Position numbers and translations under genes: made by a program. From the sequence record NC_019406.1: DNA of 64,000 nucleotides. The stretch is one strand, 5' to 3'. Under the pieces are notes generated by a model. The model did not search any database, was not told the origin of the DNA, and saw nothing but the letters and a program-made list of their open reading frames with translations. This document shows positions 19 through 47,816 of the stretch, piece by piece (positions within the stretch are counted from its first letter, which is position 1; each line of letters opens with the position of its first letter).

Positions 19-108
19 GGGTGAGTTCTCCGAGCGGTCGAAGGGGAGTGACTCTTAATCACTTGGACGAAAGTCCCACCGTGGGTTCGAATCCCACCTC
101 ACCCTCCA
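19..108 (+). tRNA. tRNA-Lys(CTT) with long class II variable arm
   Basis: Acceptor GGGTGAG/CTCACCC, U73, CCA; anticodon arm AGTGA-CTCTTAA-TCACT; T-arm GTGGG-TTCGAAT-CCCAC; long V-arm. Confidence 0.85.
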
Positions 109-7053: not shown

Positions 7054-7142
7054 TCTCATGTGGCGGAACTGGTAAACGCACCGGACTGTTAATCCGGCGT
7101 CTCGCAAGAGACTTGGGGGTTCGAAGCCCTCCGTGAGAGCCA
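7054..7142 (+). tRNA. tRNA-Asn(GTT) with long class II variable arm
   Basis: TCTCATG/CGTGAGA, G73, CCA; CCGGA-CTGTTAA-TCCGG; V-arm GTCTC-GCAA-GAGAC. Confidence 0.85.
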
Positions 7143-7171
7143 ATATGTCGCAGCTTCGGCTGCGGCGAAAT

Positions 7172-7255
7172 GCCCTGGTAACCCGGCGCGCACTACGAAT
7201 GCGCGAGCCGTAGCTGGAGTTGAAAAGGCTGGTTCGAATCCAGCCCAGGGCGCCA
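7172..7255 (+). tRNA. D-armless tRNA-Arg(ACG)-like RNA
   Basis: GCCCTGG/CCAGGGC, G73, CCA; GCGCA-CTACGAA-TGCGC; canonical T-arm; only about 9 nt at the D position. Confidence 0.7.
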
Positions 7256-41385: not shown

Positions 41386-41635
41386 GCCGGGCTATCACGT
41401 CGCGGAAATCCCGAAGGGCGTCCTTGGCGAACCGTCCAAGATCGCCGAGGAACACGCCGAGTTCCAGGACGCCGTCTCGCAGGGCATCAAGATCATGGCC
41501 CTGGTCGAACTGGCGGACCTCTACGGCGCCATCAAGAAGTACCTCGAAAAGCATCACCCCGGCGTCACCTTCGACGATCTGGACGCCATGAGTTTCGTCA
41601 CCGAAAGGGCATTCATCAATGGCCGCCGCACTTAA
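41372..41635 (+). CDS. small helical protein, MazG-like fold possible
   Basis: KIAEE.AEF.DA...VELADLYGA acidic helical pattern. Confidence 0.6.
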   Translation: MLDSKPGYHVAEIPKGVLGEPSKIAEEHAEFQDAVSQGIKIMALVELADLYGAIKKYLEKHHPGVTFDDLDAMSFVTERAFINGRRT

Positions 41636-42473
41636 TTGGCGGGACATTCCCGTCGCCGATTGCGAGTTCAGCGTCAAAGCTTTGAACGCGATCTGGAACG
41701 ATCACGGACCGAACGTCACCCTGGGCATGCTCGCCTCCAAGTCCGATGAGGAACTGGTGCGCTCCGCCCACATCGGTCGCAAGACCCTGAAGGAAATCCG
41801 CGCCATGATCGACGTCATCTCGCAGCAGCATCCCGGCCCGGCGCCGCAACGTCCGGTCTTCATCCCGCACGCCTCGATCGACTGGTCGCTGCTGGCGCGC
41901 GCCGTGGATTTCTATCAAGCCCATGGCTTCAAGTACGTCGAGTTGCCCTGGGCAGTCAGTCGCGAGAGCGTCGCCATCACCTGTCCCAAGCCGGAGTTCA
42001 CTGCGGAGGTCGAGGGCCTGGGCAGCCTCGTGGGATCGGCCGAGCAATCGTTTCTGCACATGGACCTCGCCGGCAAGCTCGGCAAGGGTCGCTTCTGCGC
42101 CCTGACGCCGTGTTTCCGTCTGGGCGATTACGAAGATGACCTGCACCATCCCTACTTCATGAAGGTGGAACTCTACGCCAACAATGCCGAGGGCATCTCG
42201 GTGATGATGAAGGACCAGGAGGTGGCGCCGCCCGAGGCTCGGGCCATGATGTCACTGCTGCACATGATGAGCATCGTCGGCCAGTTCAACCGTACGATCC
42301 TGGGTGACGAGGAGGTGGACAACCTTCGCGGCGTCCAGACGGCTGAGGGCTTCGATGTCGAACTGAATGGAATCGAGATCGGCAGCTATGGAGTTCGCCA
42401 GCACGGCGAACATGTCTGGGTCTATGGTACCGGCGTCGCCGAGCCGCGCTTTTCTCAAGCTCGGCGCGCCTAG
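41619..42473 (+). CDS. RNAP alpha-CTD-like domain fused to class II aminoacyl-tRNA synthetase-like catalytic domain
   Basis: N-term FSVKALNAI..TLG.L..KSDEEL....IGRKTLKEI; C-term GSAEQSF, PCFR, FMKVELY, D.ELNGIEIGSYG, GTG.AEPR. Confidence 0.75.
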   Translation: MAAALNWRDIPVADCEFSVKALNAIWNDHGPNVTLGMLASKSDEELVRSAHIGRKTLKEIRAMIDVISQQHPGPAPQRPVFIPHASIDWSLLARAVDFYQAHGFKYVELPWAVSRESVAITCPKPEFTAEVEGLGSLVGSAEQSFLHMDLAGKLGKGRFCALTPCFRLGDYEDDLHHPYFMKVELYANNAEGISVMMKDQEVAPPEARAMMSLLHMMSIVGQFNRTILGDEEVDNLRGVQTAEGFDVELNGIEIGSYGVRQHGEHVWVYGTGVAEPRFSQARRA

Positions 42474-44990: not shown

Positions 44991-45028
44991 AAAGGCCCGC
45001 CGGAGTGATCCGGCGGGCCTTCCTTTTA
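44991..45028. terminator. bidirectional intrinsic terminator
   Basis: AAGGCCCGCCGG-AGTGAT-CCGGCGGGCCTT, A-run 5' and T-run 3'. Confidence 0.85.
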
Positions 45029-45046: not shown

Positions 45047-46456
45047 TTAGTCGCGGACACCCTCTGGCAGGAGCGCCTCGCCGATCACGCCGGCGTTCTC
45101 GGCCTCGTGGATGAAGCGCAGGACCGACTCCGAGAAGCCGTCGATGTGCGTCCACTTGCCGTAGCCGATGCCGTTCTTCGCCGAAGCGACGTTGATCACG
45201 TACGAATGCTTGACCTTCGGAGCCGGCATGCTACCGCCGCCCAGCATGTGGTTGACGGTCTTGCCCGAGGCTTGCTCATCGGTGATGATGATCAGGCGAT
45301 CGAACTCGAACTTCGACTGGACGGTGGCGACCGCTTGCACGAGCGCCGTACCGATGTGCGGCTGCGAACGACGGATCGCGTCGACGCCGGCCATGCCCTT
45401 GCGGGCGGGCACTTCCACGATCTTGTTCGAGAAGCTGATCACGCGCAGGTCTTCGGCCGGGATGACCGAGGCTAGGGCGCTAGCCGCGTCGATACGCGTC
45501 AGATCGGACTTGCCCGAGAGCTTCTCGTCCATGGAGCCCGACACGTCCACCATGACCACGGTGCGGCCCGGCAGCTTCGGCATGTCGGCGATCGAGGCGA
45601 TCAGCGCTTCGTCCAGGGCCGGTTCGAACGTCGGCGCCGCACGAGCCGCCGCGATGTAGCGGAACGGCAGGACGCGGTGCGCGCCGCCCTTGCGGGCCTT
45701 GATCGCATCGATCACCAGCTTGCGGTCGACTCCGGCCTGCTCCATGTTGCGCAGGTTGCGCAGCAGGGCGAGGTAGCCGAGCTTTTTGTCTTCCAGCAGA
45801 CGGGTGAACTCCGCCTTCTTGTCGCCGCCGGCCGACAGCGCTACTTCCCAGGTGTCCGGCGACTCCAGCGTCTGATCGACCAGCCCCTTGTACAGGGACT
45901 GACGCTCGTCGTTGGCGGCCTTCGGGTGGCTCAGGAACAGCACGTCGCGCAGACGCACTTCCTTGGCGCGGTCGTACTTGGCGATCTGATACGCGTCGAA
46001 CTTGGCGAACGCCTTGGCGAGGCCGAGCTTCATCTGCTTGGACAGCGGCGCCTTGCGGGCGCCGTCGCGCGGTGGGTTGTACTTCCAGTACAGCGCCACC
46101 AGTTCCGACAGTTCGTCGGCGCGCTGGATCACGCGGGCGATCGTCTCCGAGACGAGGCCGTTGCCCGAGCCGCGCTTGGCCAGGGTGACGAGCAGCAGCA
46201 GGGGGACGTGCCGCAGGTTGGCGACTTCGCGCGCTTCGATGGCGATCTGGGCCAGGGTGTCGACCGGGACCTGCTCAGCGAGCTTGGCGATGCGGGTGCT
46301 GATCTCGACGCCGTCCTCGTAGGCCTCGTTCTCGAACAGCAGGCAGGACATCACCGACCGGCGCAGCGCCTGGACGGCCGTCATGCGGGCTGCGGGAGCG
46401 CCCTCGTGCGTCTTTTCGGTGAAGGTGTTCTTGGTCGAACGGTTGGTCGATGCCAT
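45047..46456 (-). CDS. rsr: Ro60/Rsr ortholog (TROVE + vWA domains)
   Basis: THEG N-terminus, LRRSVMSCLLFE, ALLRNLRN, LPFRY, vWA MIDAS motif DVSGSM, IITDEQ; AGAGGAG RBS. Confidence 0.92.
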   Translation of the reverse strand: MASTNRSTKNTFTEKTHEGAPAARMTAVQALRRSVMSCLLFENEAYEDGVEISTRIAKLAEQVPVDTLAQIAIEAREVANLRHVPLLLLVTLAKRGSGNGLVSETIARVIQRADELSELVALYWKYNPPRDGARKAPLSKQMKLGLAKAFAKFDAYQIAKYDRAKEVRLRDVLFLSHPKAANDERQSLYKGLVDQTLESPDTWEVALSAGGDKKAEFTRLLEDKKLGYLALLRNLRNMEQAGVDRKLVIDAIKARKGGAHRVLPFRYIAAARAAPTFEPALDEALIASIADMPKLPGRTVVMVDVSGSMDEKLSGKSDLTRIDAASALASVIPAEDLRVISFSNKIVEVPARKGMAGVDAIRRSQPHIGTALVQAVATVQSKFEFDRLIIITDEQASGKTVNHMLGGGSMPAPKVKHSYVINVASAKNGIGYGKWTHIDGFSESVLRFIHEAENAGVIGEALLPEGVRD

Positions 46457-46492
46457 GGTCGGGTCGGCTCCTCTACTGCGTCAAAGGGTTGA

Positions 46493-46634
46493 CCGCAAGG
46501 TTGAGGGGGAACAAGTCGTCCACGGGGTGCGTCTACCAATTCCGCCATCCCTTTCCGAAGATTGGGAGCAGGGCTTGAACCTGCATTTCGCTTTACCGAA
46601 GTATCCGTGTACTACGCCACCCTCAACCTTGCGG
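46493..46634 (-). ncRNA. Y RNA (YrlA-like) unit A
   Basis: 15-bp terminal stem; GUGGCGUAG..ACUUCG / GUUCCCC motif; T-arm, closed acceptor (UUCG), Leu-like D-arm. Confidence 0.8.
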
Positions 46635-46645
46635 CTGATGACTTG

Positions 46646-46807
46646 GAGAGGTTGAGGGGGAACTGGCGAGTACGGTTTCTTATTCCGGTGCGTTTGGCCA
46701 CTCCGCCACATGATCCTGTTGGGGATCAAGGTGGGACTCGAACCCACGTGCCCTTTCGGACGCCGGTTCCACGAAGTATCCGCACTCTGCGCCACCCTCA
46801 ACCTCTC
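46646..46807 (-). ncRNA. Y RNA (YrlA-like) unit B with class II variable arm
   Basis: Same motif; V-arm GUCC-GAAA-GGGC, T-arm, closed acceptor, D-arm. Confidence 0.8.
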
Positions 46808-46820
46808 GGTCGTTGGTGTC

Positions 46821-46964
46821 GAGGTAGAGGGGGAACAGGCGGCAACGCGTTTTTAGCGCTCTACCACTGAGCTACCTCGGGCTTTCGGCCCTCGGGTTGG
46901 ACTCGAACCAACGACCTCTCGATTAACAGTCGAAGAACTCGTCGCCTACGCCACCCTCTACCTC
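46821..46964 (-). ncRNA. Y RNA unit C retaining an Asn anticodon arm
   Basis: Same motif; UUCGA-CUGUUAA-UCGAG, T-arm, closed acceptor, UAGCUCAG D-arm. Confidence 0.8.
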
Positions 46965-46967
46965 AAT

Positions 46968-47105
46968 CGGCGTGTAGGTTGACACATGGGGAACTGGCGC
47001 CGTCGGTTTAGGGGGATCGAACCCCGTGGCGCGGATTTGCAGCCGCACCATTTCAACCAGCGAAGTAGCCGAAAGCTACGCCACCATGTGTCAGCCTACA
47101 CGCCG
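46968..47105 (-). ncRNA. Y RNA unit D with non-permuted Cys-like module
   Basis: Same motif; order D-like loop, GCA anticodon arm, T-arm; no acceptor stem. Confidence 0.72.
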
Positions 47106-47110
47106 ACACC

Positions 47111-47301
47111 CCGATCATAAGGCGGTGGGGGAACAAGCGATCCCACACACGTTTAGGCGCTCTAACCGCTGAGCTACACGCCCGTCATCAGTTCAGGCCG
47201 AAGCCTGGACTGGTGGTGGACGCGGCTGGATTCGAACCAGCGACCTCCCGCTCCAGATGCGAAGTAAGTGACATCTACGCCACCCACCGCCTCGTGATCG
47301 G
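47111..47301 (-). ncRNA. Y RNA unit E with internal CCA
   Basis: Same motif; T-arm, CGCGUCC-A-CCA, UUCG hairpin linker, GGGCGUG, D-arm. Confidence 0.8.
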
Positions 47302-47302
47302 T

Positions 47303-47479
47303 GTCGAGTGTGTTTGGGAGGTCCAGGGGATCAAACGAAAAGGCACTTTTTAATGCCGGTTGTTCTACCACTGAACTACATCCGAGTTGCCCCGGATGGC
47401 GGGATTCGAACCCGCGACCCACTGGTTGATGCGAAGAAATCCTCTTCTACGCCACCTGGACCTTCCAAACACACTCGAC
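47303..47479 (-). ncRNA. Y RNA (YrlA-like) unit F
   Basis: Long terminal stem; T-arm GCGGG-UUCGAAU-CCCGC; acceptor closed by GCAA; D-arm. Confidence 0.82.
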
Positions 47480-47508
47480 CTGCCTTTGACGACAGACCGA
47501 CCTGATCA

Positions 47509-47605
47509 GCGGTGGGGGAACGAGCGCCCCCAGGAAGACTAGACCCGAAGGTCCGGTCGCTTGGTTATGGAAAGCGAAGTACCCGAGGACTACGCCACCC
47601 ACCGC
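47509..47605 (-). ncRNA. minimal Y RNA unit G (no tRNA module)
   Basis: Same motif; internal GGACC-UUCG-GGUCU hairpin only. Confidence 0.7.
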
Positions 47606-47615
47606 AAATCTGGTC

Positions 47616-47694
47616 GTCCGGGAATTATCGAGGTCGGAAATGGGCCGAAGCCCGCTCTATGCAAAAGAAGTAACCGATCTCTGTCGCCACGGAC
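47616..47694 (-). ncRNA. minimal Y RNA-like unit H
   Basis: GUCCG/CGGAC stem; GUGGCG..UACUUC / AUUCCC motif variant; GGGC-UUCG-GCCC hairpin. Confidence 0.55.
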
Positions 47695-47699
47695 AGTGA

Positions 47700-47729
47700 C
47701 CTTGTCACATAGGCCGATTCCGATGTCAA
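47700..47729 (-). promoter_or_regulatory. promoter of Y RNA-Ro60 operon
   Basis: TTGACA at 47729-47724; predicted start near 5' end of unit H; GANTC in spacer; weak -10. Confidence 0.5.
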
Positions 47730-47778: not shown

Positions 47779-47816
47779 GAAAAAGGCCCGCGACGATCCG
47801 GATCGTCGCGGGCCTT
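47779..47816 (-). terminator. intrinsic terminator after repressor gene
   Basis: AAGGCCCGCGACGATCC/GGATCGTCGCGGGCCTT with minus-strand U-tract. Confidence 0.85.

What the first reader, a model, noticed from the sequence alone, without database searches (positions are those of the whole stretch)
45047..47729. Phage Ro60 preceded by eight tandem Y RNA-like genes with different effector domains
Seen: eight minus-strand units (79-190 nt, short spacers) upstream of a TROVE-vWA gene. Each has its own terminal stem and shares a fixed-length block (plus strand GAAG-N10-CT(A/G)CGCCAC, 23 nt; 24 in unit H) and GGG(G)A(A/T)(C/T). Interiors differ: permuted tRNA mimics (A, B, C, E, F), a non-permuted mimic (D) and simple hairpins (G, H). 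Established: Ro60/Rsr binds Y RNAs, YrlA RNAs are permuted tRNA mimics with a closed acceptor, Y RNA tethers Rsr to PNPase, and such operons respond to tRNA damage; bacteria usually have one or two. Inference: a modular RNP toolkit, one protein with eight adaptors, used as tRNase decoys or to recruit different enzymes. It complements the tRNA attenuator.
Basis: partly seen in the sequence, partly recalled or inferred. Interest (0 to 1): 0.87.

Follow-up and report, generated by a model that had tools for sequence, protein, structure and literature searches.

The report
Eight Y RNA genes before phage Ro60
Caulobacter phage CcrColossus carries one operon with eight different small Y RNA-like genes, five of them tRNA look-alikes, in front of its Ro60 RNA-binding protein gene; this is the largest such array found here, but arrays of three to seven proved common in related phages and bacteria.

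Summary
The window is Caulobacter phage CcrColossus. On the minus strand, 47701-46493, eight adjacent units precede the TROVE-vWA (Ro60) gene gp139 (45047-46456). Each unit has its own terminal stem, a conserved U-GGCG(U/C)AG-N10-CUUC block (GGCGACAG in U1) and a 3' (U/A)UCC(C) motif.

A covariance model built only from units of other phages and bacteria ranks all eight as the top eight hits in the 64 kb window (41-111 bits; the next hit scores 33 bits). Five units (U3, U4, U6, U7, U8) are full YrlA-type permuted tRNA mimics. U5 has a hairpin plus a T arm. U1 and U2 are short hairpin types. Covariation supports the folds.

Each unit type is closer to its counterpart in Brevundimonas or Xanthomonas phages than to its neighbours, so the diversity is old and maintained.

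The premise that relatives have one or two Y RNAs fails for this Ro60 clade: related phages carry up to 5 units at E<=1e-4, and bacterial loci up to 7.

Y RNA-like RNAs in CcrColossus were already reported in the literature. The number of units, their heterogeneity and the conserved order were not found described.

The decoy or toolkit function is untested. Verdict: a real multi-Y-RNA/Ro60 operon and a new variant of a known kind.

The parts
47783..47816 (-). Terminator of the upstream HTH gene (gp140); it marks the 5' boundary of the operon
   Evidence: Perfect 17+17 nt inverted repeat followed by a T run (I5). Annotated as a terminator in the record.
47724..47729 (-). Probable -35 hexamer TTGACA of the array/Ro60 promoter. 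The -10 is weak (GACAAG at 17 nt spacing).
   Evidence: TTGACA is invariant at the same place in six phages, including a Xanthomonas phage (alignment A6). The strict E. coli-type scan found no full promoter, so the assignment is inferred.
47612..47701 (-). Block is GGCGACAG-N10-CUUC; interior has a GGGCUUCGGCCC hairpin.
   Evidence: R1 44.2 bits, E 3e-9. R2 41.3 bits, module only. Orthologues are the first unit in the Brevundimonas phages, 0.71-0.74 identity. The same interior occurs in contig L073.
47498..47616 (-). U2 (G): short-type unit with two small interior hairpins
   Evidence: R1 53.1 bits, E 1.7e-11. R2 43.5 bits. Fold z -4.8.
47303..47479 (-). U3 (F): YrlA-type permuted tRNA mimic with a 24-bp terminal stem, a T arm, a 7-8 bp acceptor closed by GCAA, a D arm and an extra hairpin after the D arm
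   Evidence: R2 100.5 bits. Rfam YrlA 42.3 bits, E 1.2e-7, below the gathering score of 69. 20 pairs with compensatory changes among 5 phages.
47108..47304 (-). U4 (E): YrlA-type permuted tRNA mimic. Its 7-bp acceptor is followed by an encoded A-CCA and an insert of about 30 nt that holds a stable hairpin. The insert is absent from the Brevundimonas-phage orthologues.
   Evidence: R2 110.6 bits. Rfam YrlA 30.5 bits and tmRNA_permuted 23 bits, both subthreshold. 17 compensatory pairs. Sequence read directly. GenBank calls part of it tRNA-Gln.
46967..47106 (-). U5 (D): binding module plus an anticodon-arm-like hairpin and a T arm; no D arm and no acceptor stem
   Evidence: R1 36.7 bits and R2 49.6 bits, module only. 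17 compensatory pairs, including the interior hairpin and the T arm.
46821..46964 (-). U6 (C): YrlA-type permuted tRNA mimic. Its V hairpin carries the loop CUGUUAA, identical to the anticodon loop of the phage tRNA-Asn(GUU).
   Evidence: R2 107.5 bits. Rfam YrlA 29.9 bits. GACUGUUAAUC matches the phage tRNA. Closest relative is Xanthomonas phage Tenjo unit T5, 0.76 identity.
46646..46807 (-). U7 (B): YrlA-type mimic of a class II tRNA, with a long variable arm and a Leu-type D arm. The acceptor 3' strand is followed by C-CCA.
   Evidence: R2 77.8 bits. Its 12-nt variable arm and 10-nt D-arm segment are identical to the phage tRNA-Leu(GAG).
46493..46634 (-). U8 (A): YrlA-type mimic with a Leu-like D arm (GGCGGAAUUGGUAGACGC). 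The acceptor is closed through a UUCG hairpin. Its terminal stem is shared with U7, which suggests tandem duplication.
   Evidence: R2 62.3 bits. Repeat family D1, 82% identity between the U7 and U8 5' ends. D arm 91% identical to a phage tRNA.
46468..46473 (-). Ribosome-binding site GAGGAG of the Ro60 gene
   Evidence: Read directly; it ends 11 nt upstream of the ATG at 46456.
45047..46456 (-). Ro60/Rsr orthologue (gp139): TROVE ring plus a vWA domain with the MIDAS-type motif DVSGS
   Evidence: Pfam TROVE 1.2e-17; vWA_Ro60 and VWA_2 just under their cutoffs. PDB 9KOP/9L5Y (phiLo Ro60) E 2e-20 over residues 14-450.
44992..45021 (-). Terminator at the end of the operon
   Evidence: 13-bp G+C-rich stem with a T run. 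Annotated as a terminator in the record.

Best explanation
This is one transcription unit: a conserved TTGACA promoter, eight Y RNA-like genes, the Ro60 gene and a terminator.

The likely sequence of events is as follows. The long transcript is cut into individual RNAs. The 18-25 bp terminal stems of U3-U5 would suit RNase III, and RNase P could cut at the tRNA-like acceptors of U4 and U7. Each RNA then binds one phage Ro60 ring through the shared module. That module is a terminal helix with a bulged U and a GG:CC step, then an internal loop holding GGCGUAG and UGUUCC, then a second helix.

The distal domains differ between units:
- three class I tRNA mimics (U3, U4, U6);
- two class II-like tRNA mimics (U7, U8);
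- one hairpin plus T arm (U5);
- two plain hairpin types (U1, U2).

These domains would present different surfaces to partners, as Y RNA effector modules do for PNPase in Deinococcus radiodurans and for Thermus phage phiLo.

Shown here: the anatomy, the folds, the linkage to Ro60, and the age and maintenance of the unit types. Inferred: transcription as one RNA, processing, Ro60 binding, and what each distal domain recruits or blocks.
For: Identity of the units:
- All eight are the top hits of an independently built YrlA-type model. Three also reach E<=5e-4 with Rfam YrlA.
- The 5' block aligns with the YrlA consensus 5' region (the GNCGAA and YUAY motifs described in PMC4201824). The 3' GUUCCCC aligns with its 3' strand.

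Folds:
- On 57 independent short units, 94% of cells are paired.
- Helix 2 was not used to find the units. It is 90% paired, and 6 of its 8 pairs change on both sides. Slid controls give 43-54%.
- Orthologue alignments give 17-20 compensatory pairs per unit.

Link to Ro60:
- 249 of 249 model hits in 80 bacterial Ro60 loci lie upstream of Ro60 on its strand.
- 49 of 80 viral contigs found through the 22-nt block alone carry a Ro60 gene next to it.
- No unit occurs elsewhere in the 64 kb window.

Maintained diversity:
- Paralogues within CcrColossus are at most 0.66 identical. Counterparts in other phages reach 0.64-0.76 (U4's counterpart in Kikimora, K4, is the exception), and the order is collinear.
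- CcrPW keeps all eight units.

Operon:
- TTGACA is invariant in six phages. Terminators flank the unit.

Precedents:
- M. smegmatis YrlA and YrlB are processed from one precursor, and YrlA is cut by RNase P and gains CCA (PMC4201824).
- phiLo Ro60 binds two upstream Yrl RNAs and host PNPase (PMC12135203).
Against: - There are no expression, processing or binding data for this phage.
- No unit reaches the Rfam YrlA gathering score (best 42.3 against 69).
- The 5' motif is GGCGUAG rather than the published GNCGAAN0-1G.
- The -10 element is weak and the E. coli-type promoter scan was negative.
- A weak terminator-like hairpin lies inside U3 (47357-47342). Its T run is not kept in CcrPW.
- Conserved diversity shows selection on each unit type but does not say what any type binds.
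Confidence: 0.7

Rival explanations
1. Redundant copies for dosage. The eight units are interchangeable Ro60 partners, multiplied only to supply enough RNA for the protein. Interior differences are neutral drift.
For: U7 and U8 share their terminal stem and look like a recent tandem duplicate (families D1, D4, D9). Array size varies freely between relatives, from 1 to 8.
Against: Most unit types are closer to counterparts in other phage genera (0.64-0.76) than to any neighbour (at most 0.66), and their order is conserved. Interior helices show compensatory changes, which indicates selection on each interior.
Confidence: 0.1
2. A cis-acting leader. The units act mainly while still part of the Ro60 mRNA. 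Ro60 would bind its own 5' leader to regulate its translation or stability, rather than the units acting as free RNAs.
For: There is no strong terminator between the array and the gene, and only 36 nt separate U8 from the start codon.
Against: In some contigs the units lie downstream of Ro60 (L071, L048, L054). In Acidobacteriota they are separated from Ro60 by an AAA ATPase gene. Known bacterial Y RNAs are released from precursors (PMC4201824). The two roles are not mutually exclusive.
Confidence: 0.1
3. tRNA-mimic decoys that act without Ro60. The tRNA-like domains would soak up host tRNA-cleaving or tRNA-modifying enzymes by themselves. The shared module would serve only stability or processing.
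For: Five units copy the tRNA elbow. U6 carries a true Asn anticodon loop, and U7 carries a Leu-type variable arm and D arm. A competitive-inhibitor role was proposed for YrlA in PMC7790460.
Against: The shared module is found next to Ro60 genes across phages and bacteria. Three units have no full tRNA-like domain yet keep the module.
Confidence: 0.1
4. A decayed tRNA gene cluster, meaning remnants of tandem tRNA genes with no present function.
For: GenBank annotates part of U4 as tRNA-Gln, and part of a Kikimora unit as tRNA-Ser. Tandem tRNAs give weak hits with the model (33 bits).
Against: ARAGORN and Rfam tRNA (at its gathering score) call no tRNA here. The non-tRNA module is invariant, and the folds covary over large evolutionary distances.
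Confidence: 0.02

Closest known systems
YrlA and YrlB of Salmonella Typhimurium (rsr-yrlBA-rtcBA operon; Rfam RF02553)
   Same: Both have a two-module design: a Ro60-binding stem with a GNCGAA-like 5' motif, plus a permuted tRNA-like domain (T arm, closed acceptor, D arm). A shorter companion RNA without the full tRNA domain accompanies it. The genes sit beside Ro60 on the same strand.
   Different: There are eight RNAs instead of two, and they lie upstream rather than downstream of the gene. No RtcB, RtcA or RtcR is adjacent. The motif is GGCGUAG. Scores fall below the Rfam gathering threshold.
Mycobacterium smegmatis YrlA and YrlB (PMC4201824)
   Same: The RNAs lie upstream of rsr and are processed from one precursor. 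A 7-bp acceptor is cut by RNase P and the fragment ends in CCA. U4 (7-bp acceptor plus encoded ACCA plus insert) and U7 (C-CCA) look built for the same treatment.
   Different: In CcrColossus the CCA is encoded rather than added. Cleavage has not been shown here.
Thermus phage phiLo Ro60 with Yrl1 and Yrl2 (PMC12135203; PDB 9KOP, 9L5Y)
   Same: It is a phage Ro60, the closest solved relative of gp139, with Y RNA-like genes directly upstream. Binding to Ro60 and to host PNPase has been shown for it.
   Different: It has two hairpin-type RNAs found through a CGAA motif. No tRNA mimics or array of differentiated types are described.
Deinococcus radiodurans Yrn1 and Yrn2 with Rsr and PNPase (RYPER)
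   Same: It supplies the working model: one RNA module binds the ring and the other tethers an effector.
   Different: The sequence family and the order of the tRNA-like elements differ. The partner of the CcrColossus RNAs is unknown.
Two-piece (circularly permuted) tmRNA of alpha-proteobacteria
   Same: U4 has a T arm, an acceptor 3' strand, CCA, an intervening hairpin and then the acceptor 5' strand. It gives a weak tmRNA_permuted hit (23 bits against a gathering score of 47).
   Different: U4 has no tag reading frame and no pseudoknots. It is embedded in a Y RNA module.

Membership tests
Ro60/Rsr (TROVE-vWA) protein | TROVE (HEAT-repeat ring) domain | tested here: met
   Pfam PF05731, 64.7 bits against a cutoff of 23. 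Full-length alignment to phiLo Ro60 9KOP, E 2e-20.
Ro60/Rsr (TROVE-vWA) protein | C-terminal vWA domain with a MIDAS motif | tested here: inconclusive
   vWA_Ro60 scores 24.2 against 27.7 and VWA_2 scores 25.6 against 27, both just below cutoff. DVSGS aligns with the same motif of 9L5Y.
Bacterial Y RNA, YrlA type (RF02553) | Encoded next to a Ro60 orthologue on the same strand | tested here: met
   All eight units lie within 1.25 kb upstream of gp139 on its strand. The same holds for 249 of 249 hits in bacterial loci.
Bacterial Y RNA, YrlA type (RF02553) | Stem formed by the 5' and 3' ends, carrying the GNCGAAN0-1G motif near the 5' end | tested here: inconclusive
   The stem is present and covaries. 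The motif is GGCGUAG (GGCGCAG in U7, GGCGACAG in U1), one base off the published pattern. Relatives often have GG(C/U)GAAG, which fits it.
Bacterial Y RNA, YrlA type (RF02553) | Permuted tRNA-like domain: T arm, closed acceptor stem, D arm | tested here: met
   Met for U3, U4, U6, U7 and U8 (full-length R2 alignments; covariation). Not met for U5, U2 and U1, which resemble YrlB-type companions.
Bacterial Y RNA, YrlA type (RF02553) | Score at or above the Rfam gathering threshold (69 bits) | tested here: not met
   Best scores are 42.3, 30.5 and 29.9 bits. A clade-specific model gives 62-111 bits.
Bacterial Y RNA (any type) | Stable RNA physically bound by Ro60 in cells | not testable with these tools
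   This needs RNA immunoprecipitation or a gel-shift assay.
Bacterial Y RNA, YrlA type | tRNA-type modifications (pseudouridine 55, dihydrouridine), or RNase P and CCA processing | not testable with these tools
   Only the sequence prerequisites are seen: UUCGA T loops, and a 7-bp acceptor followed by NCCA in U4 and U7.

The most novel reading that the evidence does not exclude
The array is a set of class-specific tRNA look-alikes held on Ro60, including Asn-type, Leu/class II-type and CCA-ended forms. The phage would use them to block or divert particular host tRNA-cleaving defence nucleases or tRNA-processing enzymes. U4 and U7 would be split by RNase P into two-piece, CCA-ended RNAs that might even be charged with an amino acid. 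Arrays of Y RNAs in phages and soil bacteria would then be an unrecognised, diversifying layer in conflicts over tRNA.
Probability: 0.15. Interest if true: 0.85.

Novelty: new variant of a known kind. Interest (0 to 1): 0.55.

Why it matters
The effector partners of bacterial and phage Y RNAs are largely unknown, and most work has looked at one or two RNAs per species. Here one protein sits with eight conserved, distinct RNA partners in a phage that grows on a standard laboratory bacterium. That gives a direct handle: pull down each RNA, delete each unit, and ask what each tRNA-like or hairpin domain binds.

The wider result may matter more than the single locus. Arrays of up to 7 such units are common next to this Ro60 clade in phages and in Acidobacteriota and alpha-proteobacteria. 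It also corrects database annotation, because parts of these units are filed as tRNA genes and terminators.

Tried and rejected
- Rfam at gathering thresholds found nothing in the array. Only the permissive search gave subthreshold YrlA hits.
- ARAGORN calls no tRNA in the array, so the GenBank tRNA-Gln is rejected.
- The E. coli-type promoter scan was negative. The promoter call rests on conservation of TTGACA.
- My first regular-expression descriptor gave 9 false hits in the window. All lacked the (A/U)UCC motif, so it was tightened. It still misses units with 3-4 bp terminal stems (2 of 5 in phage Tenjo), so its counts are lower bounds.
- Model R1, built from short units, cannot span the long units. 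It mis-aligned U4 and U7, so R2 was built.
- The supplementary table of Chen et al. 2014, which would say how many CcrColossus YrlAs were reported, is not held. The 2020 Annual Review is not held either.
- gp154 'nucleotidyltransferase' was checked as a possible CCA-adding enzyme and has no Pfam hit.
- The weak model hit at 41419-41471 (+) lies inside a coding region and was set aside as chance.
Full report
SOURCE AND CONTEXT

The window is 100% identical to Caulobacter phage CcrColossus (NC_019406/JX100810). Window position 45047 corresponds to record position 107047. The region lies at the end of a minus-strand block of nucleotide-metabolism and replication genes: DNA polymerase, helicase, thymidylate synthase, ribonucleotide reductase, dUTPase and an HTH protein. 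It faces the lysis cassette.

The gene at 45047-46456 (-) is gp139, annotated 'RNA-binding protein'. It has a TROVE domain (Pfam 1.2e-17) and a vWA domain just under the Pfam cutoffs. Over its whole length it aligns with the Ro60 of Thermus phage phiLo (PDB 9KOP/9L5Y, E 2e-20), including the DVSGS metal-site motif. It is a Ro60/Rsr orthologue.

Reading the minus strand from 47701 to 46493 gives eight back-to-back units. Each has:
- its own terminal stem, 6 to 25 bp;
- a bulged U;
- GGCG(U/C)AG, ten bases, then CUUC (GGCGACAG in the first unit);
- a variable interior;
- (U/A)UCC(C) followed by the 3' strand of the stem.

I call them U1 to U8 in order of transcription.

Rfam at curated thresholds sees nothing here. 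At permissive thresholds three units hit YrlA (42.3, 30.5 and 29.9 bits; gathering score 69). In those alignments the conserved 5' block lines up with the YrlA consensus GGCGAAUGC...CUAC, and the 3' GUUCCCC lines up with its 3' strand.

INDEPENDENT STATISTICAL TEST

I collected relatives in three ways:
- by DNA similarity;
- by the Ro60 protein in viral contigs (35 loci) and in genomes (80 loci);
- by the 22-nt block alone in viral contigs (at least 120 contigs).

A simple descriptor found 451 units outside CcrColossus and CcrPW. Their lengths are bimodal, around 60-80 nt and around 120-150 nt.

I built two covariance models from these units. R1 used 57 short units (A4). R2 used 32 long units (A5). 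Neither contained any CcrColossus, CcrPW or Brevundimonas-phage sequence.

R2 was searched over the whole window with filters off. Its eight best hits are exactly the eight units:

| Unit | Bits | What matched |
|---|---|---|
| U4 | 110.6 | full tRNA-like model |
| U6 | 107.5 | full tRNA-like model |
| U3 | 100.5 | full tRNA-like model |
| U7 | 77.8 | full tRNA-like model |
| U8 | 62.3 | full tRNA-like model |
| U5 | 49.6 | shared module only |
| U2 | 43.5 | shared module only |
| U1 | 41.3 | shared module only |

The ninth hit (33 bits) is a tandem tRNA pair, a false positive of the kind Chen et al. already warned about (PMC4201824). R1 independently gives U2 53.1, U1 44.2 and U5 36.7 bits.

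STRUCTURE

On the 57 independent short units, I tested this fold: a terminal helix, a bulged U, a GG:CC step, an internal loop holding CG(U/A)AG and CGCUUGUU, and a second helix.
- It is 94% paired, against 43-54% when the partner columns are slid.
- The second helix played no part in finding the units. It is 90% paired, and six of its eight pairs change on both sides.

Orthologous units from CcrColossus, CcrPW and three Brevundimonas phages give 17-20 pairs with compensatory changes per unit. These fall in the terminal stems, helix 2, the T arms, the acceptor stems, the D arms and the U5 interior hairpin.

ANATOMY OF THE INTERIORS

- U3: T arm, a 7-8 bp acceptor closed by a GCAA loop, a D arm and one extra hairpin.
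- U4: a V hairpin with loop AUCUGGA, a T arm and a 7-bp acceptor. The 3' strand of the acceptor is followed by A-CCA, then an insert of about 30 nt that holds a stable hairpin, then the acceptor 5' strand and the D arm. The Brevundimonas-phage orthologues lack the insert and close the acceptor with three bases.
- U6: a V hairpin whose loop CUGUUAA is identical to the anticodon loop of the phage tRNA-Asn(GUU). The acceptor contains tandem G-A mismatches.
- U7: a long variable arm and a D-arm segment identical to those of the phage tRNA-Leu(GAG). The acceptor is followed by C-CCA. It is a class II tRNA mimic.
- U8: a Leu-type D arm, with the acceptor closed through a UUCG hairpin.
- U5: an anticodon-arm-like hairpin plus a T arm only. 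'Non-permuted' is fair, but it is a partial mimic.
- U1 and U2: hairpins only.

Long variable loops, variable acceptor lengths, and RNase P cleavage with CCA on a 7-bp acceptor are all known among YrlA RNAs of different species (bioRxiv 10.1101/312249; PMC4201824). Here these variations sit together in one locus.

THE UNIT TYPES ARE OLD AND MAINTAINED

CcrPW (94% identical across the region) keeps all eight units. The Brevundimonas phages have five or six units in the same order: U1-type, U3-type, U4-type, U5-type, then a U6- or U7-type. The 43-kb Xanthomonas phage Tenjo has about five.

Pairwise identities show that most units are closer to a counterpart in another phage than to any neighbour in their own genome:
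- U1 0.71-0.74
- U3 0.68-0.70
- U4 0.65 (to Papperlapapp P4; the Kikimora counterpart K4 does not follow this pattern)
- U5 0.64-0.66
- U6 0.73, and 0.76 to Tenjo
- U7 0.68
- any neighbour in the same genome: at most 0.66

The U1 interior recurs in an unrelated viral contig (L073). U7 and U8 share their terminal stem, which suggests growth of the array by tandem duplication.

ARRAYS ARE COMMON, WHICH CHANGES THE FRAMING

With R2 at E<=1e-4, 80 bacterial loci encoding close Ro60 relatives gave 249 hits. These loci are mostly Acidobacteriota genomes, with some Asticcacaulis and other alpha-proteobacteria. Every hit is on the Ro60 strand and upstream of the gene. Up to seven fall in one locus (L203), and five or six in many. 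Several arrays run into the 3 kb flank limit, so they may be larger.

Among 56 viral loci, three to five units per locus is common. Only CcrColossus and CcrPW reach eight.

Of 80 viral contigs found through the 22-nt block alone, 49 have a Ro60 gene beside it. In a few of them the units follow the gene rather than precede it. So eight is the top of a continuous range, not a qualitative jump from 'one or two'.

OPERON

- A perfect terminator of the HTH gene lies at 47783-47816.
- It is followed by a TTGACA (47729-47724) that is invariant in six phages. The -10 is weak and sits about 34-37 nt before U1. The strict E. coli-type scan found no promoter.
- No convincing terminator lies inside the array. 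The GenBank 'terminator' at 47342-47357 is the extra hairpin of U3, and its T run is lost in CcrPW.
- A GAGGAG ribosome-binding site precedes the Ro60 start codon, and a strong terminator follows the gene.

MOST LIKELY MECHANISM

The most likely reading is one transcript that yields eight Y RNAs and the Ro60 mRNA. Each RNA docks on Ro60 through the shared module and exposes a different distal domain. This follows the established two-module view of Y RNAs. It also follows the phiLo result that a phage Ro60, its upstream Yrl RNAs and host PNPase form complexes (PMC12135203).

Processing by RNase III at the long stems, and by RNase P at U4 and U7, is inference. A decoy role against tRNA-cleaving enzymes is plausible and was proposed before for YrlA (PMC7790460). 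Nothing here tests it.

NOVELTY

The Ro60/YrlA family is known. Y RNA-like RNAs in CcrColossus are cited as previously identified (PMC12135203, citing Chen et al. 2014). That study reported 355 YrlAs in 254 bacteria and 22 phages, and it listed multiple hits per locus where they were found.

I found no description of an eight-member array, of its differentiated and conserved unit types, or of the prevalence of arrays of up to 7 units in this clade. However, the supplementary table that would settle how many CcrColossus units were listed is not available to me. I therefore rate this a new variant of a known kind.

Noticed in passing
window 47217-47284 (-) and 47342-47357 (-); L005 4454-4528 (-): The GenBank/RefSeq record annotates a 'tRNA-Gln' that is really the 5' module, V hairpin, T arm and acceptor 3' strand of unit U4. 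It also annotates a 'terminator' that is the extra hairpin of U3. Brevundimonas phage Kikimora has a 'tRNA-Ser' inside its last unit. ARAGORN calls none of these in the window.
   Followed up: yes
window 19-108, 7054-7142, 7159-7255 (+): Several phage tRNAs have class II-like bodies, 89-97 nt long with long variable arms and Leu/Ser/Tyr-type D arms. Their anticodons, however, are for Lys (CUU), Asn (GUU) and Arg (ACG), which is unusual for bacterial-type tRNAs. The 'Asn' tRNA shares long exact stretches with units U7 and U8.
   Followed up: partly
L171 1026-2384 (+), and similar gaps in many of L171-L243: In Acidobacteriota loci a BCS1-like AAA ATPase gene sits between a block of Y RNA-like units and a last unit plus Ro60. 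This suggests a three-part Ro60/Y RNA/AAA ATPase system.
   Followed up: partly
L203 1108-2486 (+): A Candidatus Angelobacter contig carries seven model hits upstream of its Ro60 gene, nearly as many as CcrColossus. Several other bacterial arrays reach the edge of the fetched flank and may be larger.
   Followed up: partly
L071, L048, L054: In a few viral contigs the Y RNA-like units lie downstream of the Ro60 gene instead of upstream, as in Salmonella.
   Followed up: no
window 41619-42473 (+): gp133 is annotated 'histidyl tRNA synthetase' but matches only the RNA polymerase alpha C-terminal domain in Pfam (3e-6). The annotation looks doubtful.
   Followed up: partly
window 41419-41471 (+): A weak hit of both models (17.9 and 14.1 bits, E 0.02-0.15) has a UGGCGAA...GUUCC stem-loop inside the gp132 coding region. 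It is probably chance.
   Followed up: no
window 47224-47288 (-): The short-unit model aligned the module's 3' motif CGCUUGUUCC to the T arm CGCUGGUUCgaaUCC of U4. The 5' block GGUGGCG-UA-G also reads like a tRNA acceptor strand plus U8-A9-G10. This hints that the Ro60-binding module itself descends from a tRNA.
   Followed up: no
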